A DNA stretch of 64,000 bases from positions 186,001 through 250,000 of IMG/VR virus record IMGVR_UViG_3300021963_000021; one strand, given 5' to 3'. Position numbers and translations under genes: made by a program. Below the pieces are notes generated by a model that saw nothing but the letters and a program-made list of their open reading frames with translations, made no database searches and was not told the DNA's origin. This document shows positions 34,201 through 56,356 of the stretch, one piece after another; the stretch's first letter is position 1; every line of letters begins with the position of its first letter.

Positions 34201-35020
34201 ACTAACATCGACAGGTGTTGGTACTATCAACAACATGAGCATAGGTGCTACTACAGCATCTACAGGTAGATTTACGACATTGAATGTTGTTGATACAACT
34301 ACTACTGCTTATAATTTAAGCCTGGCTTCTACATCATCTACAGCATTAACAGCTGACAGAGCGTTAACGTTTGATGTTGTAAACGCAGCTAGAACAATCA
34401 AGTTAGCAGGCAACGTTGATCTTGCCAATAACTTGACCACTGGTGGTGCTGTTACGTTCTCTGGAGCGTTCTCGTTTACAGGAACGTTATCAAACAATAC
34501 GTCAGTGACATTTCCAACGACAGGAACATTGGCAACCACAGGTAACCTGAGTCAGTTTGCTGCTACGACATCTGCTCAACTGCTCGGTGTTATCAGTGAT
34601 GAAACAGGTAGCGGATCTTTAGTATTTGGCACATCGCCGACTATAGCCACCCCAGACATTACTTTTAAGAATGCCGCTGTTACAGGGGACGCAGACTATG
34701 CGTTCGATGCTTCTGCTACCACTGTGGCATCGTGGATAGCAAACTTTACGACAACACGAACTCTTATCGTTTCAAATCTAACCGCAGGCAGAATGGCAAA
34801 GGTCTATGTAAGAAACACCAACGGTACAGCAAGACTGATCAACGTCACTGCTAGCACAACGGCTGCTGGTCATGTGGCAGTAAACTTAGCTGGAAACTTT
34901 GTAGGTGCCAATGCTGCTGGACAAGTAAGTGCTACTGGAGTAACATTAGTTGCCACCAGCGGTACTGCTGTTATCACAGTGTGGAACGCCGGCGGCAACC
35001 TAGTTGGTATGGTTAATTAA
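31277..35020 (+). CDS. long tail fibre protein (1247 aa)
   Basis: Thr/Gly/Asn-rich with 42-aa repeats; N-terminal module shared with the 2744-aa protein. Confidence 0.7.
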   Translation: MPLTNIFNPSTAVNTGTNEITIAGHGYLPNQGVLYSNGGGSSVGGLVDGYKYYVIYINANTIQLANTEDEARNNIAVDLLSTGAGTTHTLIETNIFPNSAAYYDFYRRLRLVGDGLPIEGVTLEADSVRDSLTLVAGNNITLECDTNDIALDQFTINAPNYDLKFLTGTSDLRLYNDAGLDETVTFKAGTGVAITHNSLTEIEFTSFGVTESDTLESVTTRGNITNNRLVMNNITVAEVISTPGVDGVSGISGSKIGTTNINTTGDGTLDNVLRFANTITSSSDPAETITINFTVPNAGTMSYSASYIAESAMLTSGDVTLQRQNPSTLVWTNLDSQSGTLARTGYDVQGIYAELSFTPVNYRIIWNWTGNTSFVRLAFNIYFEVEPVAGYELIKTTTETKHLILGVDDGSITVRGPATFTGYIDTEGLRIYENNIVGTNSNDDIVVDLNGTGALELRATTFKTDQTTFNLINTVATTVNAFGAATTINVGANTGTLTIGNPTVVGTQATQNLYNTVATTVNAFGAASTINVGANSGTITIGNPTLVGTQTTQNVYDTVATTVNAFGAATAIDIGANTGTITINNPTLVGTQTTQNVYDTVATTVNAFGAATAIDLGATTGTLTINNPTVVGTQSTQNLYNTTATTLNFAGAASTINMGASGGGGTMTIRNDNVVMNGDLQIQGGDITTNQTSFNLLDGTATTVQAFGAATTLTFSTAGGTTTVRGNVVINQDLQVKGGDITTNATTFNLLNTDATTINAFGAASTINLRNLVITSSNTIDSSDSSGITFIPLVTFNSDIVVENDLTVNRAMTIGTNLTVTGDLTVNGTTVTLNTSTLDVEDLNITVAKGAATAAAANGAGLTVDGASATLTYASADDSWNFNKLLKATSLQGTPVGTTTRAAGNFTTLDANGDVTLGDATADTITVNGKFANGTILRAGTTATNTLALAAYDTDTGPAWTNLITLTSSTTPTLTLTSTGVGTINNMSIGATTASTGRFTTLNVVDTTTTAYNLSLASTSSTALTADRALTFDVVNAARTIKLAGNVDLANNLTTGGAVTFSGAFSFTGTLSNNTSVTFPTTGTLATTGNLSQFAATTSAQLLGVISDETGSGSLVFGTSPTIATPDITFKNAAVTGDADYAFDASATTVASWIANFTTTRTLIVSNLTAGRMAKVYVRNTNGTARLINVTASTTAAGHVAVNLAGNFVGANAAGQVSATGVTLVATSGTAVITVWNAGGNLVGMVN
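32693..33196 (+). repeat. 4 x 126-bp coding tandem repeat plus degenerate copies
   Basis: Unit starts at 32693, 32819, 32945, 33071 and (degenerate) 33197. Confidence 0.9.
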
Positions 35021-42181: not shown

Positions 42182-42394
42182 TCATTTTGATGATAGCAGA
42201 TCTTGAGCTTGTCGTACTTCGTTTTCTAAGTACTCAATTCTTGCTGCCGCTTCGTCTAACAAAGTGGCTATTTTATCTGGTGCGCCTTCTTCTACGCTCT
42301 TACGACCAGGAATTTGTCTCCTAATTTCAGCTCGCTTACGAAGTCGAAACACCAGACTCTGCTCGCTAACGGGCAGGTGGCTTTCATCTTTCAT
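42182..42394 (-). CDS. hypothetical protein
   Basis: 70-aa coupled ORF. Confidence 0.55.
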   Translation of the reverse strand: MKDESHLPVSEQSLVFRLRKRAEIRRQIPGRKSVEEGAPDKIATLLDEAAARIEYLENEVRQAQDLLSSK

Positions 42395-43281
42395 ATCCTC
42401 TCCATAAAGTTTCTAACCCAGGCCAGACGAGCTTGCTCGTCCATGGCTGTGTATTCAACAATGTTGGCACGGATAGCATCTACTAGTGGATAGTATTCTT
42501 CGTCTAGTTGGTGCTTGATATCTTTGTTCAAGTCCACTAACTTGTCTGTACGTGGATTGCGAGCAACCCATTTTGAAGTCAAGTAGTAAGGGCTCTTGAT
42601 CTTAGCACTCACACCATCTTCTGTATAGAATACATAACCTTCGTGTTTACATTCCTTGGCCATTGCTGATAGTCGTGCCATGTTAGTTGTTACACTTTCT
42701 GGCACAAAGCATCCTAGCACACGACTCATTTCCATTAACATGAACGGATCATGTTCGACTATAGAGTTCCATTTGTTTTCACGATAGCCTAGGATGTACA
42801 TGCCTTCCTTTTCAGGAACGATATGCGGGTCGTTACGGTGAACGCACTCAAACATAAATGTATATCCTTGCCAACGATCACACAAGTCAAAATACTTTGT
42901 TTCGTCGATCAGTTCACGTGCCATTTTAACATAGTCGCTGTCTGTGCTACCAGTAGTAGACACCAACAGTTTGCCGTTATGATAAGTCATAGCAACCATG
43001 AATCCGTTGACTTTACGAAATGCTGTAACTTTGGTTTCTGGAGCAAGCACTGGTGCTTCCTTTTCGATGCCATAGTTATAGATTTTAGTAAATGGGTATG
43101 TCACTAGATTGAAGTCAGTGTCTACAATGGATCCACGACATTCCGCAATAAAGGGATTCCACAGACTATCGTAGAACACTTTCTTCTTGTATTTGAGCAC
43201 GTAGATACCTTCACCAGCTTCTTTCATATTAACTAGGTTGCTGGTTTCTACATACTCCTTCAGCTCATCTTTAAACATCAT
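42391..43281 (-). CDS. T4 Rnl1-like RNA ligase
   Basis: ECRG, FTKIYNY, motif I KVNG, STTGS, FE, EGYV, KIKS.YY. Confidence 0.85.
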   Translation of the reverse strand: MMFKDELKEYVETSNLVNMKEAGEGIYVLKYKKKVFYDSLWNPFIAECRGSIVDTDFNLVTYPFTKIYNYGIEKEAPVLAPETKVTAFRKVNGFMVAMTYHNGKLLVSTTGSTDSDYVKMARELIDETKYFDLCDRWQGYTFMFECVHRNDPHIVPEKEGMYILGYRENKWNSIVEHDPFMLMEMSRVLGCFVPESVTTNMARLSAMAKECKHEGYVFYTEDGVSAKIKSPYYLTSKWVARNPRTDKLVDLNKDIKHQLDEEYYPLVDAIRANIVEYTAMDEQARLAWVRNFMERI

Positions 43282-43739
43282 GTTCTCCAGATTTCTTTAT
43301 AGCCTTCTTCTTCAGTTGGCCATTCAAAATTATCAATCATGCTGCGGACAACATGATCGGGGATTGATTTGCCAGGGCGGCTAGCCAAACGACGAGCGTG
43401 TTCTTCGGCAGACGGAGTAGGAAAGACCACAGCGATGTGCCAGTAGTCGGGTAACATACGGAACTTTCTAGCACGACTTTTTACAGTTGTGTTAGTTTGG
43501 TCCCAAATGATATCTCGACCTGCGGCCCTAGCACGAACTACAGCGCGAGTCATTAGACGAACAGCACGTGGCATTACTTCGTCAAAGACTTCGTTGTAGG
43601 TCTTGCCTAGGCGTTTAGCAAACTTTTCTACATAGACATCGGTGGAAATATATTCCATACCTACTGCCCAGGTTTGGCCTGCCAGCCATGTAGTTTTGCC
43701 ACTAGCCGGCACTCCAACTAAAATATATGCTTTAGCCAT
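43278..43739 (-). CDS. polynucleotide kinase-like P-loop kinase (AAA_33)
   Basis: GVPASGKTT, ISTD, IWDQTN, R...R...IP. Confidence 0.85.
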   Translation of the reverse strand: MAKAYILVGVPASGKTTWLAGQTWAVGMEYISTDVYVEKFAKRLGKTYNEVFDEVMPRAVRLMTRAVVRARAAGRDIIWDQTNTTVKSRARKFRMLPDYWHIAVVFPTPSAEEHARRLASRPGKSIPDHVVRSMIDNFEWPTEEEGYKEIWRT

Positions 43740-44280
43740 GATGTGATTTTACCTCTCCGGTCATTGCGTCTGCGATTGCACGTTCCATAGTAACAGCGAT
43801 CATTCCTGTCGCATCCATGCCCATATCACGACAGCGATAACGTTCCATTCCACTGGTACCACCGTGTAAGTGTCCGTGGAAATGAACAGCACCTCTGTGC
43901 ATTTGATCCCATTCAGCGATAGGATAATGGAACATAACTACCCTAGTTTTTTCATATGTCATACACAAGTACGGATGTACTTCTGCGAAACAACTACGAA
44001 ACACAGGGTCGTTTAACAATTTGCGATCGTGGTTGCCCTCGATCAAAATTTTTGTACCATTTAACCGACGCATGATGTTTACTGCTTTTGCCGCAGGCAA
44101 GAACGCAACATCACCTAATATGTAGACTGTGTCTTCCGGAGCGATAGTGTTATTCCATTCCAACACCATTTGCTCGTTCATATAGTCTACATCGTTGTTA
44201 AATCTTGCTCTCGACTGTGGACAGAATTTCATGATATTGGCATGCCCAAAGTGTAAGTCACTGGTTATCCATGTAGTCAT
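43732..44280 (-). CDS. calcineurin-like metallophosphoesterase
   Basis: SDLHFGH, LGD, GNHD, HYP, HGH.H. Confidence 0.9.
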   Translation of the reverse strand: MTTWITSDLHFGHANIMKFCPQSRARFNNDVDYMNEQMVLEWNNTIAPEDTVYILGDVAFLPAAKAVNIMRRLNGTKILIEGNHDRKLLNDPVFRSCFAEVHPYLCMTYEKTRVVMFHYPIAEWDQMHRGAVHFHGHLHGGTSGMERYRCRDMGMDATGMIAVTMERAIADAMTGEVKSHHG

Positions 44281-44303
44281 AATTCGCCCTCTTTATATTT
44301 CAA

Positions 44304-44675
44304 TTATTTCTTTAAAGCTTCTAGGGTAGCAAGCATTGAAGCCCATTGTGTGCTCGGGTCTACACCTTCATTGAAGTTGTGTAGCGCCATTAGGGTTTCA
44401 AATTTGCCTTCTGGAACCTTAAAGAAAATGTTAGCATAGGTACAATCGAAGTCGTCATCGGCGTCATGGCTGTACCAAGGGTGTTCTGACATTTCGTCAA
44501 AAACATCTTCGTAACTTTCTCGGTTACCGCCACCGTTGCGAGTATGAACAACGATATAACCATCTTCTAAATAGACATTTCGAAAACGACCGAAGTCTTC
44601 TCGAGTCTTACCTAACAGAGACAAAATTTTGTCAGTGTCAGGATTCATACCAAACAGCATATTGTACAATGACAT
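44304..44675 (-). CDS. hypothetical protein (start revised to MSLYNMLFG)
   Basis: AGGAG RBS before 44675. Confidence 0.55.
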   Translation of the reverse strand: MSLYNMLFGMNPDTDKILSLLGKTREDFGRFRNVYLEDGYIVVHTRNGGGNRESYEDVFDEMSEHPWYSHDADDDFDCTYANIFFKVPEGKFETLMALHNFNEGVDPSTQWASMLATLEALKK

Positions 44676-44688
44676 ATCGTCTCCTTTC

Positions 44689-45204
44689 TTAGTCCCAATC
44701 TTCCTCACGTTGCGGAGGAACCCAAATTTTCTTGTTGCCAAGCTCGTCGTATTCAAAAGCAACACCATTAATTGTGTGAGGCTCGTTTTCGTCATACGTC
44801 CAACCAAGCACTTTCATCATCTTGTGTTTGACCATTAAGTTGGGGCTACGAAAGACTTCAGTATCACGGAAGCCCATCATTACGCCGACTTCGCAGACAG
44901 CACCCGAACGACAAACACCAGCAACACAATGTACAACAACATTCATTCGTTGTTCCATTGCGTGTTCTAGCAGTCTCACTAGTTGTTCTGCTTGCTGATC
45001 AGTGACTTTGAATTCTTCGCCCCATTTGTCATCTCGTTCTAGATCTAAGAACTCAAACTGATGAGTTTCTTTGAACTGATGCCTAGGAGTAGGAAACTCC
45101 ATAGCAGGATCTACGATCTGTATCAACATAGAGTTGATACCAGCATCAATATGATGACCTTTCGGAATGTCTGCCAACGCTACGTTTTGTATCCAAGGAT
45201 TCAT
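44689..45204 (-). CDS. dual-specificity/tyrosine phosphatase-like protein
   Basis: VVVHCVAGVCRSG CX5R loop; GGAG RBS. Confidence 0.85.
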   Translation of the reverse strand: MNPWIQNVALADIPKGHHIDAGINSMLIQIVDPAMEFPTPRHQFKETHQFEFLDLERDDKWGEEFKVTDQQAEQLVRLLEHAMEQRMNVVVHCVAGVCRSGAVCEVGVMMGFRDTEVFRSPNLMVKHKMMKVLGWTYDENEPHTINGVAFEYDELGNKKIWVPPQREEDWD

Positions 45205-45206
45205 TG

Positions 45207-45884
45207 TTATCTCCATAGTAAGTCAAAGTTACCTTTGAGAACAGTAGAACATTTTGATCTACAACCAGTTAAATGATCTTGAACAGAGTCATCTTGGAAT
45301 CGGTAAGTGCGGATTTTATCTCCACGCATACCTGATCCTACCTGTTGGCGTCTATCACTTGCTATACTATTATTATACGATCTTTTGAGTTCTAAGTCAA
45401 TGCGCTGTTGTAAAGTTGCCATAGCTTCGTTGTAGCTATTTTGGCGACTTCGGCATTCGGCTTTGGCTATTATACCTGTAGGAAGGTGTGTGATGCGGCA
45501 GCTATTTTGGTGCTTGTTCCGAAATTGTCCACCCGCTCCTGTACCGCTGTACCATTCGATCTTGAGATCGTTTTTGGTAACAGCAACAGAGTCAGGATCT
45601 GGAGACCCGTCTATGACAGCGACGGTAACAGTTGAAGTGTGGACACGACCTTTTCGTTCGGTCGGAGGCACTCGCTGGATACGATGACCACCGGGCTCAT
45701 TATCTAAGCCTGATAGATCTACACCCTCTACAAGTATCGAACACTCGCCAGGACGTACATCTATCAGGCGGGTAGTTCAACCCAGTTTATTTCCTAGTTT
45801 TTGGTAAGCGGTCGCGAGATCACTTACGAATAGTTTACTATCTTCGCCGCCTTCTGCGGCACGGATTTCAATAGTGCGTTTCAT
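45207..45884 (-). CDS. prfA-like: class I release factor homologue (RF1-type PxT, GGQ; lacks domain 1) with in-frame UGA at codon 36
   Basis: MKRTIEIRAAEGGEDSKLF...KLG*TTRLI...GGHRIQRVPPTERKGRVHTS...GAGGQ...KIRTY; TGA at 45779-45777, same frame on both sides. The ORF track shows only the downstream part. Confidence 0.85.
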
Positions 45885-46110: not shown

Positions 46111-46188
46111 TGGCCTGCCCGGAGGGATTCGAACCCCCGACCCACAGCTTAGAAGGCTGTTGCTCTAATCCTGCTGAGCTACGGGCAG
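46111..46188 (-). tRNA. tRNA-Arg(TCT)
   Basis: Cloverleaf, loop CTTCTAA, CCA. Confidence 0.95.
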
Positions 46189-46193
46189 AAATT

Positions 46194-46269
46194 TGGAGCG
46201 GGAGACGAGTCTCGAACTCGCGACATCTTGCTTGGAAGGCAAGTGCTCTACCAACTGAGCTACTCCCGC
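46194..46269 (-). tRNA. tRNA-Gly(TCC)
   Basis: Loop CTTCCAA, CCA. Confidence 0.95.
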
Positions 46270-46275
46270 AATGTC

Positions 46276-46479
46276 TTAGGTTGGAAAATATTTTTCCATA
46301 ACTTCCAATTTGTCCATATACTCAGCAATCTGAGCGACTTCTTTTTCGATAGCATCCATAATATCACTGTGTTCGTGGATTGCTGTTGGGTTGTTCAGCA
46401 TCACTTCGACATTCATTTTATGTTTAGTGATGTGTGATCGAAAGTGTTCTTTCGATGCTTCAATGAGTTCTTTACGCAT
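46276..46479 (-). CDS. hypothetical protein (start MRKELIE)
   Basis: Coupled to the upstream ORF stop. Confidence 0.55.
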   Translation of the reverse strand: MRKELIEASKEHFRSHITKHKMNVEVMLNNPTAIHEHSDIMDAIEKEVAQIAEYMDKLEVMEKYFPT

Positions 46480-46736
46480 TATGAGTTCACCGTTTCGCTG
46501 TTTTGCTTCGAATTCCACTCTTGTTTGGCCTTTTGATAGGCGTCTTCGCTTAGGCCATGCCAACCAATACAGTCGCCTGTAGGACTACGACCACAACCGC
46601 AAGTACCTTTTTTCATATCTTCAACTTTTGGAGTCACTTTGTCTTTCCTAAAAATTAAATCGTAATTGTTGTTAAACGCTTTCGATGATGCTCTTGATTG
46701 TATAGCATCACCAGTTATATCGTTTCTTGCTACCAT
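46479..46736 (-). CDS. CDGSH-like Fe-S motif protein
   Basis: CGCGRSPTGDCIGWH (3Cys-1His). Confidence 0.55.
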   Translation of the reverse strand: MVARNDITGDAIQSRASSKAFNNNYDLIFRKDKVTPKVEDMKKGTCGCGRSPTGDCIGWHGLSEDAYQKAKQEWNSKQNSETVNS

Positions 46737-46752
46737 CTACATATCCTCAAAT

Positions 46753-46831
46753 TGGTCCGGGAAGTGGGATTCGAACTCACGATCTCCTGCTCCCAAAGCA
46801 GGCGCTTTAAGCCAGACTAAGCTACACCCGG
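46753..46831 (-). tRNA. tRNA-Pro(TGG)
   Basis: Loop TTTGGGA, CCA. Confidence 0.9.
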
Positions 46832-46835
46832 AAAT

Positions 46836-46909
46836 TGGTTGCGGGTCCTGGAATCGAACCAAGGACTAGAGCTTATGAGACTCTCGAGATACCCCTTCTC
46901 CAACCCGCT
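46836..46909 (-). tRNA. tRNA-Met(CAT), initiator-like
   Basis: Loop CTCATAA, unpaired 1:72, fMet-like D arm. Confidence 0.8.
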
Positions 46910-46916
46910 ATAAACC

Positions 46917-47492
46917 TTATAGGATTCCTTCTTTGGTCAGTGTTGCTACTGCTTCATCGCTTAGAGGAATCTCTGTCTTAATGTTAAGTTCAAGGACTTC
47001 GTCATTGATCTTTTGTTTCTGCTTGCGTAGATTGCTAAGTTCAGTCTTGAACTTGTCAATGTCTCCTGTGCTGAGCACAGAAGTGTCTACGGTATCACTG
47101 TAGCCGTAAATGCTACGACGACTAGTTTCGTTCTTGTCGTTGCGTATCTTATCCAACTTGCCGTTGATTACGACCAAGTCAGCGACTGGTGCGTGTCTGA
47201 CCATTGCTTCTAGCTGACTGATACGCTTGTCAATGAAAGCCGCACGAGTCAACAACAGGTCGATTCCGCTCTGGGCGTTTGCCGCACCTACTAGGCCGCG
47301 GATGTTATATTGCGCAGCCAACAACAGGCCACGACGCTGATCGTTTTCCAACAGCTTCTTGTTGGCAGCATCAATTTCGGCCTTTGCGTCCTGGAACTCA
47401 TTAAGCTGGACATCCAACTTAATATCGATATTTTTCAAAGCATCGCTGATGCTGTTCTGGACTACGTTTGCTTTACGAAGAGTGATGTTCAT
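46917..47492 (-). CDS. hypothetical coiled-coil protein
   Basis: 191 aa with its own promoter and AAGGA RBS. Confidence 0.65.
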   Translation of the reverse strand: MNITLRKANVVQNSISDALKNIDIKLDVQLNEFQDAKAEIDAANKKLLENDQRRGLLLAAQYNIRGLVGAANAQSGIDLLLTRAAFIDKRISQLEAMVRHAPVADLVVINGKLDKIRNDKNETSRRSIYGYSDTVDTSVLSTGDIDKFKTELSNLRKQKQKINDEVLELNIKTEIPLSDEAVATLTKEGIL

Positions 47493-47515
47493 GTGTTTTT
47501 CCTTATGATTTATCT

Positions 47516-47544
47516 ATTATACTGCCTTGACATGCTGTTGTCAA
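47516..47544 (-). promoter_or_regulatory. sigma70 promoter TTGACA-N17-TATAAT
   Basis: Perfect consensus. Confidence 0.8.
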
Positions 47545-47545
47545 C

Positions 47546-47816
47546 AAAAAAATGACGGATCGGTAAAAGGTCAAGTAATAGACCGGACAATAGACAGTGG
47601 AAGGTTTGTAATCTTCCTATGACAATGTACAAGGTACAAAGCACAGAGGTCTATATATTTCCGATTAACAAATGACATTCTATTAGGGATCGGATCACAT
47701 AAACACGGACAGTTTTCAAGACTGTTTGCGTTAAGTTCGGATTAGGCTTGGAGCCTAAGCCATTTTGTCCATCCTCATCTACCTTTTACTTCACCGGCTA
47801 GTTTTAATAAACTAGC
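47546..47816 (-). ncRNA. candidate structured ncRNA (about 270 nt)
   Basis: Nested long-range stems and several hairpins; no ORF on the minus strand. Confidence 0.5.
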
Positions 47817-47821
47817 AAAAC

Positions 47822-47897
47822 TGGTGCCGGTTGTCGGATTCGAACTGACCACATCCGCCTTACAAGAGCGGCGCTCTACCTAATGAGCTAAACCGGC
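47822..47897 (-). tRNA. tRNA-Thr(TGT)
   Basis: Loop CTTGTAA, CCA. Confidence 0.95.
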
Positions 47898-47920
47898 ATA
47901 AAACTATATATCAAACAACT

Positions 47921-48012
47921 TGGCGGAGATAGTTGGATTCGAACCAACGGTAGAGTTTAACCCCTACGACGGTTTAGCAAACCGCTGCCTTCAGCCACTC
48001 AGCCATATCTCC
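47921..48012 (-). tRNA. tRNA-Ser(GCT)
   Basis: Loop TTGCTAA, long variable arm. Confidence 0.95.
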
Positions 48013-48016
48013 GTAT

Positions 48017-48106
48017 TGGCGGAAGCGGTGAGATTCGAACTCACGGAACATTTCTGTTCGTCGGTTTTCAAGACCGGTGCAATCAGCCAGACTCTGCCAC
48101 ACTTCC
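48017..48106 (-). tRNA. tRNA-Ser(TGA)
   Basis: Loop CTTGAAA, long variable arm. Confidence 0.95.
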
Positions 48107-48111
48107 ATAAA

Positions 48112-48187
48112 TGGTAGGTCCTGACAGTCTCGAACTGCCGACATCCGCCGTGTAAAGGCGGCGCTCTACCAACTGAGCTAAGGACCC
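48112..48187 (-). tRNA. tRNA-Val(TAC)
   Basis: Loop TTTACAC, CCA. Confidence 0.95.
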
Positions 48188-48269
48188 AAAAGATCTATTC
48201 TGAAACACACTGGCTGTTGCTTGTCATTGTCTTTAACTACCTCTCGGTGGCGGTAGACCAATGTGTTTT

Positions 48270-49165
48270 AGAATAGTGTTAAGACTGAGATTACATCTTA
48301 ACCATAAGCACCTCTAGCATTACCGTACACCTTGCGAGCATACGTTCTCTAGATATCCACTGAGCCCTATTGCTAGGTATCCCAGTCTGCTTACAGTATC
48401 GCCGTTTTAAGTCAGGCAGTAGACTTGACGCCATATGCTATTCTACACCATCTATCCCGTTAACCTTGCGAGCTATTCGAGTGCGCTAACACTCTACGAA
48501 ACTTCCAGTATAAACTAATGTCACCTTGCGAGCTTCATTAGACTTGATTGTGTTACCACTCAAGTATTAGATACTTTTCACATATGACCGAGGCAGTCTT
48601 TGCGTTTTTGTTTAATGGCTGGAGTTGAACCAGCAACATTCTGTTTAATAGACAGACGATCTACCATTGATCTACATTGCAACCTACCGTGATGAGCTAC
48701 CTCTGTTGCTGTATACTCTTTTGGAATACACAATACAACTCACCACATACCTTTCCTCTCGCGGAGTAATCAGTGATGTTTCACGACCAGTGTCCTGCGT
48801 CAAAACAGTCCACCGCCCATTTACATTGCGCTAAAGCCCTTAGGAGCGACCCCTCGGACAATAACACTACCCTTTCTCATACCAGTTAATAAGTTGGTTT
48901 TGTATGGAAGTCAGCACCACCTGTTACTTTTCACGCACCCTGGTTCCCTTGCGGGCCAGTCGATACGCATTCTTCCCCATACACTTACTTGGCTGTTACA
49001 TCCACCGGTTTTGTCAGTGAACGCATCCTCACGGATGTGAGCAGGCTTGTTTACACGAACCATTGCTGGCGCTAGTATGTAGGCATTCTAGCTTTGGGTC
49101 GATCGCTCGACTTATTCTTCGTAGACGGCGGACCGCCTACAGGATGATAAACCACCCTAGAATTT
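48270..49165 (-). ncRNA. large structured ncRNA, GOLLD-like
   Basis: About 0.9 kb with no long ORF inside a tRNA array; repeated GCAA-capped hairpins and long-range stems. Confidence 0.55.
48611..48681 (-). pseudogene. tRNA-like domain (anticodon ATT) embedded in the large ncRNA
   Basis: Perfect D, anticodon and T arms; two acceptor mismatches; no CCA. Confidence 0.7.
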
Positions 49166-49251
49166 TTAAACCATATAAAAACACACTCACGGACATGGCT
49201 TGTTGGATGCAGCCTGCCTAACCGAACCAACTTCGGCAGTGTGTTTTTATA

Positions 49252-49335
49252 TGGTGCCCCAACCGAGACTTGAACTCGGACGCACTAGGCACTGGCTTCT
49301 AAGACCAGCGTGTCTACCAATTCCACCATCGGGGC
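49252..49335 (-). tRNA. tRNA-Leu(TAG)
   Basis: Loop CTTAGAA, long variable arm. Confidence 0.95.
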
Positions 49336-49393
49336 AATGTTTGTCTAACAATGTTAAAGAGCGTTACGCTGTTTTGTTTAACAGCATATGTAT

Positions 49394-49422
49394 ATTATAT
49401 CTTCTAACTGCCGCTGTGTCAA
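49394..49422 (-). promoter_or_regulatory. internal sigma70 promoter TTGACA-N17-TATAAT
   Basis: Perfect consensus upstream of tRNA-Leu(TAG) and the large ncRNA. Confidence 0.8.
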
Positions 49423-49452
49423 CACATTCTGGACATATTAGAAAATATTTTT

Positions 49453-49526
49453 TGGTGCCCAGACCAAGAATTGAACTTGGAATAATCGCTTATCAAGCGA
49501 CCGTTATACCATTTAACTATCCGGGC
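49453..49526 (-). tRNA. tRNA-Ile(GAT)
   Basis: Loop TTGATAA, CCA. Confidence 0.93.
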
Positions 49527-49535
49527 ATATTGAAT

Positions 49536-49750
49536 TTGTTGTAGTAGTGCCACCATCGTTATTGGCACCATTCACCTGGATTAACAAAGCCCGGGCAGGA
49601 CTCGGTACGTCACTTGGGATACTAGTCCAGTTAGCAACCAATCTGCGCCGATCTTCCGATCAGCCGGGAGTTGAACCCGTCCCCTTCTACTATTTCGGTA
49701 GTTCGAACTTACCTAGATAGCGTGACATTCTCTTGCTGACACTACAACAA
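49536..49750 (-). ncRNA. candidate structured ncRNA (215 nt)
   Basis: 10-bp terminal stem, two T-loop-like hairpins, GGAA tetraloop. Confidence 0.55.
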
Positions 49751-49754
49751 AACT

Positions 49755-49829
49755 TGGCTCCCCAGGGTGGGATCGAACCACCGACAAACGGATTAACAGT
49801 CCGCTACTCTACCTCTGAGCTACTAGGGA
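49755..49829 (-). tRNA. tRNA-Asn(GTT)
   Basis: Loop CTGTTAA. Confidence 0.95.
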
Positions 49830-49835
49830 ATAAAT

Positions 49836-49910
49836 TGGTGGAGGATAGCGGAATCGAACCGCTGACTCAAGCGTGCAAGGCTAGTGTTTTCCCAATTAGA
49901 CTAATCCCCC
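49836..49910 (-). tRNA. tRNA-Ala(TGC)
   Basis: Loop CTTGCAC. Confidence 0.93.
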
Positions 49911-49914
49911 AAAT

Positions 49915-49990
49915 TGGCGCCTCGTAGGGGAGTCGAACCCCTGTGTTCCGCTAGACAGGCGGGCATAATAGACCGTTATATGAACGAGGC
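49915..49990 (-). tRNA. tRNA-Asp(GTC)
   Basis: Loop CTGTCTA. Confidence 0.92.
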
Positions 49991-50000
49991 AAAACTTGTT

Positions 50001-50076
50001 TGGTAGCAGTAGTTGGACTCGAACCAACGATAAACACCGTATGAAGGTGCCGCATTAGCCGCTATGCTATACTGCC
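50001..50076 (-). tRNA. tRNA(CAT), elongator Met or Ile2
   Basis: Loop TTCATAC, paired acceptor. Confidence 0.85.
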
Positions 50077-50080
50077 ATAT

Positions 50081-50225
50081 CCATTTAGAAGTAACACAGT
50101 TTACTATTCTCTTGCTACCGAATGTGTAGTACCTTACAGGTCTACGTTACTAGTATCATCGGCTTTCCGCTTCGAACAAGGTTAGGTCTGATCATGACCC
50201 GACGAGCTGTGTTACTACTAAATGG
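50081..50225 (-). ncRNA. candidate structured ncRNA (145 nt)
   Basis: 18-bp terminal stem with one mismatch; multibranch interior. Confidence 0.55.
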
Positions 50226-50228
50226 TAA

Positions 50229-50305
50229 TGGTGTGCCCTCTGGGATTCGAACCCAGGACCCTCTGATTAAAAGTCAGATGCTCTAACCTACTGAGCTAAG
50301 GGCAC
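50229..50305 (-). tRNA. tRNA-Lys(TTT)
   Basis: Loop CTTTTAA. Confidence 0.95.
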
Positions 50306-50360
50306 AATCGTTTACCAGATTTACCATCATCTCCCATGGTAATTTCCTCCTTAAAAAACT

Positions 50361-50436
<76 letters not shown>

Positions 50437-50442
50437 ATTATA

Positions 50443-50518
50443 TGGTACACGGTACGGGAATCGAACCCGTCTTTCCGCCTTGAAAGGGCAGCGTCCTCAA
50501 CCGATAGACGAACCGTGC
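50443..50518 (-). tRNA. tRNA-Glu(TTC)
   Basis: Loop CTTTCAA. Confidence 0.95.
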
Positions 50519-50546
50519 GTAAAAAATTTTCAATTGTCAAAGAACG

Positions 50547-50623
50547 TGGAGCACAGGGTGGGACTCGAACCCACGAATCAACAGTTTTGCAGACTGCGCC
50601 ATTGGCCTCTCTGGTACCTGTGC
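50547..50623 (-). tRNA. tRNA-Cys(GCA)
   Basis: Loop CTGCAAA, U73. Confidence 0.95.
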
Positions 50624-50637
50624 GTTAAAGTCTATCA

Positions 50638-50666
50638 AGTATATGATAAATCAAACAGCTTGTCAA
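50638..50666 (-). promoter_or_regulatory. internal sigma70 promoter TTGACA-N17-TATACT
   Basis: Near-consensus, upstream of tRNA-Cys. Confidence 0.75.
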
Positions 50667-50751
50667 CTACTATTTTAGGTTTTTGTCGATGATGATCATC
50701 AAAACCGCTAACATGATTAGAACTGCCAATGCCCCATGTGAGTCTCCTTGT

Positions 50752-50825
50752 TGGTGCTCTAGCCAAGAATTGAACTTGAAATTCAGTCTTACCAAGACTG
50801 TGTTATACCATTTAACTACAAGAGC
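50752..50825 (-). tRNA. tRNA-Thr(GGT)
   Basis: Loop TTGGTAA. Confidence 0.93.
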
Positions 50826-50826
50826 A

Positions 50827-50905
50827 TGGTACCCCTGCTCAGATTTGAACTGAGAACAACTTCTCCTTTTGAGAGAGACGACTTTACCAATTTGTCCACA
50901 GGGGC
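50827..50905 (-). tRNA. tRNA-Leu(CAA), short variable arm
   Basis: Loop CTCAAAA; variable region of only about 7 nt. Confidence 0.8.
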
Positions 50906-50911
50906 ATACTT

Positions 50912-50987
50912 TGGTGCTGCCTCCTGGGATCGAACCAGGTTCCTCGGTTCTTCAGACCGGTGCTATGACCACATCAGCTAAAGCAGC
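50912..50987 (-). tRNA. tRNA-Phe(GAA)
   Basis: Loop CTGAAGA. Confidence 0.93.
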
Positions 50988-50997
50988 ATTTAATCTT

Positions 50998-51072
50998 TGG
51001 TGGATCTTGTAGGATTTGAACCTACGACCAACAGCGTGTCGAGCTGCTACTCTACCACTGAGCTAAAGATCC
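50998..51072 (-). tRNA. tRNA-Val(GAC)
   Basis: Loop TCGACAC. Confidence 0.9.
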
Positions 51073-51073
51073 T

Positions 51074-51147
51074 TGGGGTGAAACCGGGAATCGAACCCTG
51101 TCTACCTGTTTCACAGACAGGTGTGCGACCACTACACTAGTAACACC
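51074..51147 (-). tRNA. tRNA-His(GTG)
   Basis: Loop CTGTGAA, G-1:C73; some stem mismatches. Confidence 0.85.
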
Positions 51148-51152
51148 ATTAT

Positions 51153-51229
51153 TGGCCGGCCCGGAGAGACTCGAACTCCCAACCTCTAGTTTCGAAGACT
51201 AGCACTCTAATCCATTGAGTTACGGACCG
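51153..51229 (-). tRNA. tRNA-Arg(TCG)
   Basis: Loop CTTCGAA. Confidence 0.93.
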
Positions 51230-51235
51230 ATAACT

Positions 51236-51309
51236 TGGCTGGGGATGATGGATTCGAACCACCACAGACGGAATCAAAATCCGTAGTCCTACCATTAGAC
51301 GAATCCCCA
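51236..51309 (-). tRNA. tRNA-Gln(TTG)
   Basis: Loop TTTTGAT. Confidence 0.93.
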
Positions 51310-51313
51310 ATAT

Positions 51314-51387
51314 TGGCACCGGACCAGAGACTCGAACTCCGACGAACGGTTTTGGAGACCGTCATGCTGCCATTACATCAGCCCGAT
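51314..51387 (-). tRNA. tRNA-Trp(CCA)
   Basis: Loop CTCCAAA; D stem ATGT/GCAT gives U11:A24. Confidence 0.93.
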
Positions 51388-51388
51388 A

Positions 51389-51742
51389 TTATTTGATTGT
51401 GTCGTACCGAGTATCTTCGGTTTCGATAAAGTTGACCATTCCAACAGAGATATGATATCCTTCTGTTTTCATAGCTTGATATGCTTTTTGATACACGTCT
51501 GATTCTAAGAGATTCTTTTGAAAATCTCTAGCTTTAAACATGTCTTTAGAAAAGAAGTAGACGTTTTCTACTTGTGTTGTAGCATCCCAATCCCATGACT
51601 GCTTATCTTCTATAAGCCCTTGTTCTACACAGTCTTTTAGAAACGCAACGAATTCTAAGGAGATATCTTCTCTAAAGTTGATATCATCTTGGGTCTGAAA
51701 TTCAGCTCCGTAGTAAATTTGCTGTATTTGTGTAGCTATCAT
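51389..51742 (-). CDS. hypothetical protein inside the tRNA array
   Basis: 117 aa, AAGGA RBS, TAAATA motif upstream. Confidence 0.55.
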   Translation of the reverse strand: MIATQIQQIYYGAEFQTQDDINFREDISLEFVAFLKDCVEQGLIEDKQSWDWDATTQVENVYFFSKDMFKARDFQKNLLESDVYQKAYQAMKTEGYHISVGMVNFIETEDTRYDTIK

Positions 51743-51768
51743 GATTGGGATCCTTTTAGCTATTTATC

Positions 51769-51855
51769 TGGTGGAGGAAGTAAGATTCGAACCTACTAGT
51801 CCCTAAGAAAACAGATTTACAGTCTGCCGCACCCCTCCAACTGTGCCGTTCCTCC
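51769..51855 (-). tRNA. tRNA-Tyr(GTA)
   Basis: Loop CTGTAAA, long variable arm. Confidence 0.95.
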
Positions 51856-54200: not shown

Positions 54201-55301
54201 TCACAAGGAATCACCTTGGACAAAATTTTTAATTTCAGATACTGCTGCTTGATTTAGTAAAGTCGATTCTCCGCACTGGTGAGCGCACCTATCTAATCTA
54301 TTACAATTAGTCCAACTGTCTTTTATCTCGTTGAATATTTTACTGTTGACGATGTCTGATAGGGCTGTGTGATTTAAATCAATGCTTTTTAGCCCACCAT
54401 TGTTTTCTATCATTTCAAATAGTTTAGCTCTGTCTGGGTGAAGCTCGGGTTCGTAGCCATAGAAACGATCCAACAGCCATCCGCAGGGCAACACATAGCC
54501 TTCTGCTGACACACAGACTAGTCCAGTTTTCTGTGCCATACAATTTATGTTAGTGTTCTTAAGGTACGAATCGTAATCGCCAAATTTCTCTACGATTTTG
54601 TCATAGACATCATAGCCTCTGTTGAGGTATTTTTTATCAGTGGCAGGTTTAAGCCATCTTATGATTTTGTTATCCTTGTCGTGTACAGGACTTGCGTCTA
54701 TTTTTTTATGTGTTTTATCAATAAATCTAGAAGTGAACTTGACTACGAATCCTTTGAATCCTAATTCAGTACTGAGTTTTCTTGCTGCGTTGACTTGATG
54801 TTCATTGTGCTGGAATACGATATAACTCCATACAGCGTTGCCGCCTGCTTGTATAAAGTTGCGAGCGTTGTCCATAATTTTATCAAAGTCTGTGCCTATC
54901 CTGTAGAGATGATTAGTGTCTTCGAGACCGTCTACGCCAAAAAACACAGTATCCTGCGGTCTAAGAGTCTTGGCTAATTCTTTCCACCAAGCACTACTGC
55001 GAAGGCTTCCGTTAGTTCTTATGGTTATCTGTGCCTGAGACACAGAGTGAAAGTGTTTAACGATATCTATTAGATCAGGATGTACACAGGGATCACCGTA
55101 GGTGCCACACAATCTTATTTCTTTCATGTGTGCTAGTTCTTTTTCTTTGAACTTTTCTCCAATCCATTCAAGGCTGAGATCCACTAACGGTAGTGTAGGC
55201 CAAGTTTTTCCTCCATAGTAATTTCTAATACATTGAGGACAAGACGCATTACACCTTGTAGTGAGTTCAAATTCTATCTGTGTTAGTTTATCGTAGAACA
55301 T
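54201..55301 (-). CDS. radical SAM protein with C-terminal SPASM-like domain (start MFYDKL)
   Basis: CNASCPQC, GTYGDP, RTNG, DGL, C-terminal Cys cluster. Confidence 0.9.
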   Translation of the reverse strand: MFYDKLTQIEFELTTRCNASCPQCIRNYYGGKTWPTLPLVDLSLEWIGEKFKEKELAHMKEIRLCGTYGDPCVHPDLIDIVKHFHSVSQAQITIRTNGSLRSSAWWKELAKTLRPQDTVFFGVDGLEDTNHLYRIGTDFDKIMDNARNFIQAGGNAVWSYIVFQHNEHQVNAARKLSTELGFKGFVVKFTSRFIDKTHKKIDASPVHDKDNKIIRWLKPATDKKYLNRGYDVYDKIVEKFGDYDSYLKNTNINCMAQKTGLVCVSAEGYVLPCGWLLDRFYGYEPELHPDRAKLFEMIENNGGLKSIDLNHTALSDIVNSKIFNEIKDSWTNCNRLDRCAHQCGESTLLNQAAVSEIKNFVQGDSL

Positions 55302-56356
55302 TAACTGTAGTCTAGTAATTCGCCACGACGTCTTAGGTCTAATGTGGTACAATGAAAGCCGCCTGACAAAGTACTGGCGTGCCGCATAGGCAATGGAATC
55401 ACATCAAAGCCGCGTGATTCTAACATTTTAATCAACGGCAACTGCTCTTTGCCTACCATTATTGTTTTTGGATCTACACTTAGTACATTCATGCCTATGA
55501 ATCTACTGGTAGTTGCTAGTCCACCCGGGCACCATTTGCTCACAGGTATTTCTACAACATCGTCAAAATATATTTTGTCCCACTTTTCAAATATTTTAGG
55601 ACAGTTATTGGGATTTACCCTAGAGGAGTTTAATAACACAGTGTGATCGTTCAGTGGAATGATGGTACTGTCAAAGTGTCCGAAACTATAAATGTGTTCA
55701 GCCATGTGTATTCTATAGCCCAATGGTTCTAACAGATTCTTTAACCACTTCATACCCCATTTATTTCCTGTGTTAGAAATTTGAAACAGAATGTCTTTGC
55801 CTAATCTCACACAGTTAGGAGCATCAAACACTGGCTCTAAATCTCTCAGTGTTGGTTTTGATAGGTCTTCAAAGGTATAACTCTCATCAGGCAGTATAGG
55901 TTTAGGTGCCGACACCCAAGCACATCCGTCTTTGATTGCGTCTAACATGATATCGTGATAGGCCCTTGTTTCAAAATATCTAGCTCGCATACAACTAGGA
56001 GTTTCTATCATGATGTTGCCTAATGGCAGTAACAGATCTCTGGGGCACCAAGTATGATACCCAGAAGTCTTCCAATCAGGAGTGCCGAATTCAGCATCGT
56101 GATTTATGTCTTTAGGTCTATGTACAATAACTCCTAGAGACTTTAGTGTGTCAGACATGACTTCTAGATCTTCATTAGCTTCGTCTATCAGTGCTTTTGG
56201 AAATGGTCCTTCTAGTCCTTTGATCTGTTCTTGTGAATATTCAGTGTAGACCATGCTGTGTGTACTGATGTCAATGTTGGCCATGCGAGCACCAGTGGCT
56301 GTGCCGACAATAATTTCCTCTAACGGATCCCAATGATTGTGACTGGATATTTTCAT
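55301..56356 (-). CDS. amidinotransferase (glycine/inosamine-phosphate, StrB1-like)
   Basis: WDPLEEIIVG, CPRD, FDAPN, HFDST, GGFHC.T.D. Confidence 0.9.
   Translation of the reverse strand: MKISSHNHWDPLEEIIVGTATGARMANIDISTHSMVYTEYSQEQIKGLEGPFPKALIDEANEDLEVMSDTLKSLGVIVHRPKDINHDAEFGTPDWKTSGYHTWCPRDLLLPLGNIMIETPSCMRARYFETRAYHDIMLDAIKDGCAWVSAPKPILPDESYTFEDLSKPTLRDLEPVFDAPNCVRLGKDILFQISNTGNKWGMKWLKNLLEPLGYRIHMAEHIYSFGHFDSTIIPLNDHTVLLNSSRVNPNNCPKIFEKWDKIYFDDVVEIPVSKWCPGGLATTSRFIGMNVLSVDPKTIMVGKEQLPLIKMLESRGFDVIPLPMRHASTLSGGFHCTTLDLRRRGELLDYS

What the first reader, a model, noticed from the sequence alone, without database searches (positions are those of the whole stretch)
48270..49165. About 0.9-kb ornate ncRNA, probably GOLLD-class
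There is no long ORF. It has four C-GCAA-G capped hairpins (around 48330, 48464, 48524, 48948), long-range pairs (TAGAATAG/CTATTCTA, TTCTAG/CTAGAA) and a terminal GTTAAGA/TCTTAAC hairpin. GOLLD RNAs are large phage-associated RNAs of similar size found beside tRNA genes. A strong internal promoter lies just upstream.
Basis: partly seen in the sequence, partly recalled or inferred. Interest (0 to 1): 0.6.

Follow-up and report, generated by a model that had tools for sequence, protein, structure and literature searches.

The report
GOLLD RNA in jumbo-phage tRNA array
This 0.9-kb stretch is a genuine GOLLD RNA gene, a giant protein-free phage RNA known to form cages and of unknown function, lying on the minus strand inside the 28-tRNA island of a 364-kb phage; it is a typical new member of a known family.

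Summary
Rfam's GOLLD model (RF02032) matches the minus strand at 48746..48282 over its full length (211.6 bits, cut-off 150, E 2e-58). That model covers only the conserved 3' domain. The 420 nt upstream (about 49165..48747) form a structured 5' domain. It is conserved in 136 fetched loci, where it always abuts a GOLLD 3' domain inside a tRNA array. Across 96 sequences 97.8% of cells pair, and 93 of 121 pairs show compensatory changes, against 33-44 in slid controls.

The host record is a complete 363,943-bp T4-like jumbo phage. A perfect TTGACA-17-TATAAT promoter (49422..49394, minus strand) drives tRNA-Leu, then a hairpin, GOLLD, a second hairpin, then tRNA-Val, Ser, Ser and Thr.

The linker, which faces the cage interior in the solved structures, holds a tRNA-like module at 48681..48610. 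Its D, anticodon and T arms are intact, but only 4 acceptor pairs remain, and its anticodon is the odd AUU.

The other belongs to a conserved 3' flanking hairpin. Cage assembly is inferred from published cryo-EM of relatives; expression could not be tested and the function is unknown.

A second, unnamed structured RNA lies at 49527-49754.

The parts
49394..49422 (-). Sigma-70-type promoter: TTGACA (49422-17), 17-nt spacer, TATAAT (49399-94). The start site is inferred near 49387. It drives tRNA-Leu and, by inference, GOLLD and the tRNAs after it.
   Evidence: 12 of 12 consensus matches. Relatives L018, L021, L012, L037, L009, L041 and L002 carry an equivalent TTGACA/TATAAT promoter directly in front of their GOLLD 5' end.
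49252..49335 (-). tRNA-Leu(UAG) with an encoded ACCA, the first gene of the transcription unit.
   Evidence: ARAGORN; Rfam tRNA 55.4 bits. tRNA-Leu(UAG) also precedes GOLLD in L042 and L034.
49170..49255 (-). 5' flanking hairpin with an 18-bp AU-rich stem. The stem takes in the ACCA end of tRNA-Leu and ends about 5-12 nt before GOLLD. Inferred role: a processing and/or 5'-end-protecting structure.
   Evidence: Fold gives -39.2 kcal/mol, z -4.63, 0 of 200 shuffles as good; inverted repeat I1. L031/L042 have the same arrangement with different, complementary arm sequences. Relatives with their own promoter lack it.
48747..49165 (-). GOLLD 5' domain, about 420 nt and about 12 helices. It includes the GCAA-capped hairpin at 48953-48948 and the nearly invariant motif AGUAACAGGUGGUGCUGACUUC. 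This is the cap domain in the solved relatives. The 5' end is placed by alignment to the promoters of relatives, +/-5 nt.
   Evidence: RNAalifold on 15 relatives: 134 pairs, 79 with compensatory changes. On 96 unique sequences: 97.8% of cells paired, 93 of 121 pairs compensatory against 33-44 with slid partners. nhmmer profile hits in 136 loci. In 9 of the 16 MAG loci scanned the profile hit directly abuts an Rfam GOLLD hit.
48278..48746 (-). GOLLD 3' domain, the part modelled by Rfam. It holds three CGCAAG loops (48530-25, 48470-65, 48336-31), a long-range helix 48589-80 / 48438-29, and the terminal hairpin 48302-48278.
   Evidence: RF02032, 211.6 bits, E 2e-58, model 1-416. The long-range helix has 9 pairs intact in 17 of 17 relatives, with compensatory changes; the terminal hairpin covaries.
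48610..48681 (-). tRNA-like module in the variable linker (J13/15), anticodon loop C-U-AUU-A-A. The D, anticodon and T arms are intact. The acceptor stem has 5 of 7 pairs, with two adjacent mismatches, and there is no CCA.
   Evidence: ARAGORN calls 'Asn(att)'. Rfam tRNA scores 54.9 bits but matches only model positions 4-67. In 76 relatives the D, anticodon and T stems pair in 71-76 of 76 with covariation, while only acceptor pairs 4-7 are kept. Acceptor pairing is much poorer than in free-standing tRNAs of the same loci.
48196..48276 (-). 3' flanking hairpin with a 19-bp stem (CUAUUCUAAAACACAUUGG / CCAGUGUGUUUCAGAAUAG). It ends 8 nt before tRNA-Val. Inferred role: a 3'-end-protecting or processing structure that does not terminate transcription.
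   Evidence: Fold gives -27.8 kcal/mol, z -3.74. The same hairpin, with compensatory arm changes, is present in L018, L034, L042, L022, L035, L005, L021, L012 and L037. L041 and L002 carry a GC-rich terminator hairpin there instead.
47822..48187 (-). Downstream tRNAs of the same strand and presumed transcript: Val(UAC), Ser(UGA), Ser(GCU), Thr(UGU).
   Evidence: ARAGORN and Rfam. No terminator-like site on the minus strand between GOLLD and these tRNAs.

Best explanation
The element is a GOLLD RNA gene, about 890 nt of core at 49165..48278 on the minus strand. It belongs to a complete 364-kb T4-like jumbo phage and sits inside the phage's 28-gene tRNA island.

Shown here:
- It matches the Rfam GOLLD model over the model's full length.
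- Its unmodelled 5' half is a conserved domain rich in covariation. In the fetched loci that domain always sits immediately upstream of a GOLLD 3' domain.
- It is non-coding.
- It is preceded by a perfect sigma-70-type promoter.

Inferred:
- The promoter at 49422-49394 makes one long transcript: tRNA-Leu, hairpin, GOLLD, hairpin, then tRNA-Val, Ser, Ser and Thr.
- RNase P and RNase Z release the tRNAs.
- The two long AU-rich hairpins remain as protective 5' and 3' ends of GOLLD, or serve as RNase III sites.

Inferred from published cryo-EM of relatives (env-38 14-mer, S. agalactiae 12-mer):
- The RNA folds into a 5' cap domain and a 3' ring domain.
- It assembles on its own into a dihedral 12- to 14-mer cage, with the linker pointing into the lumen.

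In this RNA the linker is a tRNA mimic whose acceptor stem is too short for normal excision or charging. The cage would therefore hold a dozen or so tRNA-shaped arms inside.

The biological role is not known for any GOLLD. My best guess, at about 0.3, is a role in the phage's management of tRNA or translation late in infection: holding or sequestering a tRNA-binding factor, or the tRNA-like arms themselves.
For: - Rfam hit of 211.6 bits against a cut-off of 150, full length, and the only copy in the genome.
- No other Rfam family, even at E<=1.
- No ORF longer than 55 aa.
- The whole 910-nt block is conserved at 70-88% identity in relatives.
- 5' domain covariation: 79 of 134 pairs; 71 of 111 against 11-18 in slid controls; 93 of 121 against 33-44 on 96 sequences.
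- The 5' profile is found in 136 loci. In 9 of the 16 MAG loci scanned it directly abuts an Rfam GOLLD hit within a tRNA array.
- Promoter with 12 of 12 matches; equivalent promoters sit directly upstream in relatives.
- Flanking hairpins are stable and covary.
- Conservation pattern of the tRNA-like linker.
- Published structures and linker orientation: PMC12286853 and PMC12990946.
- env-38 carries the same core 5' motif, ACGGGUGGUGCCGU against ACAGGUGGUGCUGA here, preceded by a GNRA-capped hairpin. This is a comparison by eye.
Against:
- Transcript ends, co-transcription and processing are inferred from sequence alone.
- Cage formation and stoichiometry are extrapolated from two relatives whose loops differ from this RNA. 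I could not map the published intermolecular contacts (L21a, L21b, L20-J13/15) onto this sequence.
- The function of every GOLLD is unknown, so the functional part is a guess.
Confidence: 0.85

Rival explanations
1. The embedded element is a working tRNA gene. RNase P and RNase Z cut it out, so 'GOLLD' here is really two RNAs (5' domain plus first 3' helix, and the rest) that may stay associated. The insert would supply an extra Asn/Lys-type decoder.
For: - ARAGORN and Rfam both call it a tRNA.
- Its D, anticodon and T stems are 100% paired with covariation, and its T-loop, D-loop, U33 and A37 are canonical in 76 relatives.
- 14 of 76 relatives have a full 7-bp acceptor stem.
Against: - In the window the acceptor stem has 5 of 7 pairs, and no CCA is encoded.
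- Across relatives only the inner 4 acceptor pairs are conserved. The flanks (GUAGGU at the 5' side, an A-run at the 3' side) are invariant GOLLD sequence.
- 55% of the embedded elements have 5 or fewer acceptor pairs. Among all tRNAs of the same loci, 94% have 6-7.
- The anticodon AUU (unmodified A34) is not used by normal bacterial tRNA-Asn (general knowledge).
- The island already encodes Asn(GUU) and Lys(UUU).
- In Mycobacterium the embedded pseudo-tRNA gave no separate transcript (PMC6582537).
Confidence: 0.1
2. It is a decaying GOLLD remnant, or a set of unrelated spacer hairpins between tRNAs, without function in this phage.
For: No expression evidence is available, and the function of GOLLD is unknown in general.
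Against: - The Rfam match is full length, with few non-canonical pairs.
- Helices throughout both domains are maintained by compensatory changes across relatives as divergent as 70% identity.
- A consensus promoter is retained.
- The same two-domain unit recurs in more than 100 viral contigs.
Confidence: 0.03
3. It belongs to another large-RNA class (ROOL, OLE, a ribozyme), or it encodes small proteins.
For: ROOL is also a phage RNA found near tRNAs. Several ORFs of 30-55 aa can be drawn in the region.
Against: - No Rfam family other than GOLLD and tRNA matches, even at E<=1.
- Substitutions among relatives preserve base pairs, not reading frames.
Confidence: 0.01

Closest known systems
GOLLD env-38 (marine metagenome; 833 nt; cryo-EM 14-mer with D7 symmetry, PDB 9MEE; Kretsch et al. 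2025, PMC12286853)
   Same: - Two-domain layout: a variable 5' cap domain and a conserved 3' ring domain with a linker after the first 3' helix.
- It lies next to a tRNA gene.
- The window RNA matches the same Rfam model.
- It shares the core 5' motif (AC-R-GGUGGUGC-Y-G), preceded by a GNRA-capped hairpin.
   Different: - The sequences are too diverged for BLAST-level similarity.
- The env-38 linker is a 42-nt disordered loop without a tRNA; here it is about 90 nt with a tRNA-like module.
- The loops of the two P21 sub-hairpins differ: here UUAGCG and CGCAAG. Conservation of the published kissing contacts is therefore untested.
Streptococcus agalactiae GOLLD (700 nt; full length forms a 12-mer, the 3' domain alone a 10-mer; PDB 9L0R and 9LMF; reviewed in PMC12990946)
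   Same: Same family and the same conserved P14-P27 3' domain, with oligomeric cage formation.
   Different: - Sag GOLLD lacks P9, P11a-c and P21b, and it comes from a Firmicute prophage.
- The window RNA is longer (about 890 nt) and resembles the full 'lake' consensus.
- The stoichiometry for this RNA cannot be predicted.
Mycobacterium/Mycolicibacterium GOLLD inside horizontally acquired tRNA arrays, with an embedded tRNA-Phe or pseudo-tRNA in J13/15 (PMC6582537; Morgado 2020, cited in PMC12990946)
   Same: A GOLLD inside a roughly 30-gene tRNA cluster, with a tRNA-like insert at the same linker position. That insert appears not to be expressed separately.
   Different: - Those examples are bacterial chromosomal or plasmid arrays, not a jumbo phage.
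- The insert here is of Asn/Lys type (NUU) rather than Phe.
- In this subclass the insert is present in about 75% of members, and its acceptor stem is systematically reduced to 4 bp.
ROOL RNA (RF03087-type; phage-borne, near tRNAs, forms an 8-mer or 6-mer cage)
   Same: A large, ornate, phage-borne RNA next to tRNA islands that forms a cage with a disordered internal linker.
   Different: The sequence and fold are unrelated. There is no ROOL hit in the window at gathering score or at E<=1.

Membership tests
GOLLD RNA (Rfam RF02032) | Covariance-model match to the conserved 3' domain above the curated gathering score | tested here: met
   211.6 bits against 150, E 2e-58, model positions 1-416 of 416, minus strand 48746..48282.
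GOLLD RNA (Rfam RF02032) | The 3' domain helices are kept by compensatory changes in relatives | tested here: met
   The long-range helix 48589-80/48438-29 has 9 pairs intact in 17 of 17 relatives, with double changes. The terminal hairpin covaries. The first 3' helix covaries.
GOLLD RNA (Rfam RF02032) | Giant size (about 700-900 nt) with a structured, less conserved 5' domain joined to the 3' domain | tested here: met
   The core is about 890 nt. The 5' domain has 111-121 consensus pairs, 97-98% of cells paired, and 71-93 pairs with compensatory changes against 11-44 in slid controls. GOLLDs L003, L013, L020 and L033 have an unrelated 5' region, as expected for a variable domain.
GOLLD RNA (Rfam RF02032) | Encoded by a phage or prophage, next to or inside tRNA gene clusters | tested here: met
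   A complete 363,943-bp virus record with a T4-like large terminase, 52% identical to those of jumbo phages PA5oct and Phosso. There are 28 tRNA genes at 46111-51855, all on the GOLLD strand.
GOLLD RNA (Rfam RF02032) | A variable linker after the first 3' helix, sometimes carrying a tRNA | tested here: met
   The linker of about 90 nt holds a tRNA-like module at 48681..48610. The literature reports the same: PMC12286853, PMC12990946.
GOLLD RNA (Rfam RF02032) | RNA-only homo-oligomeric nanocage (10- to 14-mer) | not testable with these tools
   Known only from cryo-EM of env-38 and S. agalactiae GOLLD. The published contact residues could not be mapped onto this sequence.
GOLLD RNA (Rfam RF02032) | Expressed, with levels rising at phage lysis | not tested
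ROOL RNA | Match to the Rfam ROOL covariance model | tested here: not met
   No hit at gathering score in the whole window, and none at E<=1 in 48150-49800.
Canonical tRNA (for the embedded module 48610-48681) | Cloverleaf with D, anticodon and T arms and conserved loop residues | tested here: met
   Rfam tRNA 54.9 bits (cut-off 29). D, anticodon and T stems pair in 71-76 of 76 relatives. T-loop UUCRA, D-loop GG and U33 are invariant.
Canonical tRNA (for the embedded module 48610-48681) | A 7-bp acceptor stem with a free 5' end and a 3' NCCA, as needed for RNase P/RNase Z processing and charging | tested here: not met
   The window has 5 of 7 pairs (C3.A70 and G2.A71 are mismatched) and no CCA. 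The Rfam match covers only model positions 4-67. Across 76 relatives only pairs 4-7 are conserved, and the flanks are invariant GOLLD sequence.
Canonical tRNA (for the embedded module 48610-48681) | An anticodon used in normal bacterial decoding | tested here: not met
   The anticodon is AUU. Relatives carry GUU 36, UUU 13, CUU 8, UGU 4 and others, so position 34 is free to vary. That A34 is normally confined to tRNA-Arg(ACG) in bacteria is general knowledge and was not tested here.

The most novel reading that the evidence does not exclude
In this widespread GOLLD subclass the lumen-facing linker may be a selected, non-excisable tRNA mimic, not a spacer or a stray tRNA gene. It has an intact elbow and anticodon arm, a 4-bp acceptor stem, and a C-U-N-U-U-A-A loop of Asn/Lys type.

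On this reading the cage presents a dozen or so caged anticodon arms. These could act as a decoy or sink for host anticodon nucleases, or for tRNA-modifying or tRNA-binding factors. It would work alongside the neighbouring Pnk-like kinase, phosphatases and Rnl1-type RNA ligase (42391-45671) that look like a tRNA-repair kit.

That would give GOLLD its first concrete function.
Probability: 0.12. Interest if true: 0.75.

Novelty: new member of a known kind. Interest (0 to 1): 0.35.

Why it matters
GOLLD is among the largest and most elaborate bacterial and phage non-coding RNAs. In 2025 it was shown to build RNA-only cages larger than a ribosome, yet no function is known.

This locus adds no new class. 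It does give a clean, complete example with a defined promoter, flanking processing or protective hairpins, and a full tRNA and RNA-repair neighbourhood, in a complete jumbo-phage genome.

The comparative set gathered here has about 100 unique relatives. It shows that the 5' domain, which Rfam does not model, is conserved and could be modelled. It also shows that the linker insert is a constrained tRNA mimic rather than a normal tRNA. Both results narrow the hypotheses about what the cage holds.

Tried and rejected
- blastn of the region against 50,697 GenBank phage records found no match, so no cultured phage carries a close copy.
- A profile of the 5' domain found nothing credible upstream of four other GOLLDs (L003, L013, L020, L033). 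Their 5' regions differ. Many of the 41 loci from the first pattern scan were not GOLLD at all: only 4 of 13 loci checked gave an Rfam GOLLD hit.
Its 3' arm has a better, covarying partner in the flanking hairpin.
- My first pair count used coordinates off by one base. It was redone.
- I first read the '[ ]' brackets in the cmscan structure line as a pseudoknot. They mark a nested long-range helix.
- I could not map the published contacts (L21a, L21b, L20-J13/15) onto this RNA. A tool alignment to env-38 was left out because its sequence exists only as text in a supplement, and I did not type it into a tool. That comparison is by eye only.
- Y-RNA idea for the second RNA at 49527-49754: the phage has no TROVE/Ro gene.
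- Weinberg 2009 and Morgado 2020 are not held in the paper library. Statements about them come from papers that cite them.

Full report
**What is there**

The window is bases 186001-250000 of a 363,943-bp virus record that CheckV rates as complete. A scan of the whole window against all 4227 Rfam families gave 27 tRNA-type hits and one other hit. That hit is GOLLD (RF02032), on the minus strand at 48746..48282, covering model positions 1-416 of 416, at 211.6 bits against a gathering score of 150, E 2e-58. It is the only GOLLD in the phage. A permissive scan of 48150-49800 at E<=1 added nothing: no ROOL, no OLE, no ribozyme. No ORF longer than 55 aa overlaps the interval.

- The four C-GCAA-G loops exist, on the minus strand, at 48336-31, 48470-65, 48530-25 and 48953-48. 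The first three lie in the Rfam-modelled 3' domain.
- The 'terminal' GUUAAGA/UCUUAAC hairpin (48302-48278) is the last hairpin of the Rfam model, and it covaries among relatives.
- The promoter is a perfect TTGACA-17-TATAAT on the minus strand at 49422..49394.
- The UUCUAG/CUAGAA pair is not supported. It pairs in 4-12 of 15 relatives, and its CUAG is used in a covarying local helix.
- The CUAUUCUA arm (48276-69) is better placed in a 19-bp hairpin with 48214-48196 (see 'Transcription unit' below).

**The 5' half**

Rfam models only the conserved 3' domain. blastn against loci fetched by a GOLLD pattern scan of IMG/VR showed that the whole block 49169..48260 is conserved at 70-88% identity in about 20 contigs. 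Several of these are jumbo phages of 214-364 kb.

- RNAalifold on 15 of them predicts 134 pairs, 79 with compensatory double changes.
- In my own count, 97% of cells pair and 71 of 111 5'-domain pairs are compensatory. With partners slid by 1-2 columns, the figure is 11-18.
- An nhmmer profile of the domain hits 136 loci. In 9 of the 16 MAG loci scanned, the profile hit directly abuts an Rfam GOLLD 3' hit inside a tRNA array.
- On 96 unique sequences, 97.8% of cells pair and 93 of 121 pairs are compensatory, against 33-44 in slid controls.

The published env-38 sequence carries the same core motif in the same local setting. This comparison is by eye. This is therefore the mainstream GOLLD 5' domain, not a new one. 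Four other GOLLDs in the fetched set have unrelated 5' regions, which fits the known variability of that half.

**The linker**

Between the first 3' helix and the rest of the 3' domain lies a 72-nt tRNA-like module (48681..48610). ARAGORN calls it 'Asn(att)'. Rfam tRNA scores 54.9 bits but matches only model positions 4-67.

Among 100 unique GOLLDs with this 5' domain, 75 have a callable module (76 with the window). Their anticodons are GUU 36, UUU 13, CUU 8, UGU 4, UCU 3 and a few others, including one UUA. In an alignment of the 76:

- the D, anticodon and T stems pair in 71-76 of 76, with abundant compensatory changes;
- the T-loop, the D-loop GG and U33 are invariant;
- only acceptor pairs 4-7 are conserved, and the flanks are invariant GOLLD sequence.

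55% of the embedded modules have 5 or fewer acceptor pairs. Of all tRNAs in the same loci, 94% have 6-7. The island already encodes Asn(GUU) and Lys(UUU), and it covers all 20 amino acids.

I read the module as a selected tRNA mimic, not an excised decoder. An embedded tRNA or pseudo-tRNA at this position is already in the literature. In Mycobacterium the embedded pseudo-tRNA gave no separate transcript.

**Transcription unit (inferred)**

The promoter is followed by tRNA-Leu(UAG), which has an encoded ACCA. Next comes an 86-nt hairpin (49255-49170; -39.2 kcal/mol, z -4.6) whose stem takes in that ACCA. GOLLD follows, then the 3' hairpin (48276-48196; -27.8 kcal/mol, z -3.7). Eight nucleotides later come tRNA-Val, Ser, Ser and Thr.

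- The 3' hairpin recurs, with compensatory arm changes, in nine relatives. Two others carry a terminator hairpin there instead.
- Relatives whose GOLLD has its own promoter directly upstream lack the 5' hairpin.

This pattern suggests that the hairpins protect the ends of a GOLLD cut out of a polycistronic tRNA transcript, or that they are RNase III sites.

**How it probably works**

Cryo-EM shows env-38 GOLLD as a D7 14-mer cage of 380 A and S. agalactiae GOLLD as a 12-mer. In both, the 5' domains form the caps, the 3' domains form the rings, and the linker points into the lumen. By homology, this RNA should do the same and hold its tRNA-like arms inside.

The function is unknown for the whole family. 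Proposals in the literature include storage of the embedded tRNA, ribosome binding, and encapsulation.

The genes next to the tRNA island on the same strand fit a tRNA or translation theme but prove nothing:
- an RF-1/ArfB-like protein (45207-45671);
- a dual-specificity phosphatase;
- a metallophosphoesterase;
- an AAA_33 kinase;
- a T4 Rnl1-type RNA ligase (42391-43281).

**Verdict**

This is a typical, complete GOLLD RNA in a jumbo-phage tRNA array, and a new member of a known kind. Its modest extra value lies in the defined operon anatomy and in the comparative evidence on the 5' domain and the tRNA-mimic linker.

Noticed in passing
window 49527-49754 (minus strand), between tRNA-Ile(GAU) and tRNA-Asn(GUU): A second conserved structured RNA of about 225 nt with no Rfam family. 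It is found near full length, at 71-90% identity, in 19 other unique GOLLD-bearing loci; in L018 it lies directly 3' of GOLLD. RNAalifold on 20 sequences gives 47 pairs, 31 with compensatory changes: a closing stem made by the 5' and 3' ends, a UUCG-capped hairpin, a T-arm-like CGGGUUCAACUCCCG, and others. A Y-RNA-like reading has no support from a Ro/TROVE gene in the phage. It may be an undescribed RNA class linked to phage tRNA arrays.
   Followed up: partly
window 42391-45671 (minus strand): An RNA or tRNA repair-like gene cluster next to the tRNA island: an RF-1/ArfB-like protein (45207-45671), a dual-specificity phosphatase, a metallophosphoesterase, an AAA_33 kinase, and a T4 Rnl1-type RNA ligase (42391-43281). 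Parts of it have DNA-level matches in five related 354-424-kb phages.
   Followed up: partly
L009:9857-10556 (IMGVR_UViG_3300047548_001122, 214 kb): The tRNA-like module embedded in this relative's GOLLD has anticodon UUA, which would read the UAA stop codon. ARAGORN calls it 'tRNA-Stop'. I did not check whether that phage recodes stop codons.
   Followed up: no
window 50078-50225 (minus strand), between tRNA-Lys(UUU) and tRNA-Met: Another long hairpin with 19-25-nt arms, of the same style as those flanking GOLLD. It is conserved at 76-82% identity in L050, L115, L156 and L122. Such hairpins appear to be recurrent spacer modules of these tRNA arrays.
   Followed up: partly
L054, L056, L055, L051, L044 (MAG contigs labelled Verrucomicrobiaceae, Prosthecobacter and Akkermansia muciniphila); L045, L046, L057 (Pyrinomonadaceae): GOLLDs with the same 5'-domain motif sit in tRNA arrays on contigs binned to Verrucomicrobia and Acidobacteria. 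Two of these contigs are 2.7 and 3.6 Mb long, so they are probably prophages or chromosomal arrays. The Verrucomicrobial copies have a shorter 3' domain (about 430 nt) with no tRNA call in the linker.
   Followed up: partly
L031:508-1437 (IMGVR_UViG_3300008262_000102): This relative's GOLLD lacks the middle of the 5' domain (profile positions about 159-337). It is otherwise near-identical to L042. This is either a natural deletion variant or an assembly artefact.
   Followed up: no
window 50640-50680 (minus strand): A second sigma-70-like promoter (TTGACA-17-TATACT) sits inside the tRNA island, in the 128-nt gap between tRNA-Thr(GGU) and tRNA-Cys. I saw it in the folded spacer sequence and did not scan it formally.
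   Followed up: no
window 46270-47821 (minus strand): Two stretches inside the tRNA island hold ORFs with no Pfam or PHROG match: 46917-47492 (191 aa), and 46276-46736 (85-95 aa ORFs).
   Followed up: no
window 15946-24180 (minus strand): A 2744-aa ORF lies among structural-looking genes: a virion structural protein at 31277-35020, a protease-like protein at 12157-14805, and a radical-SAM protein at 54201-55352. It was not analysed.
   Followed up: no
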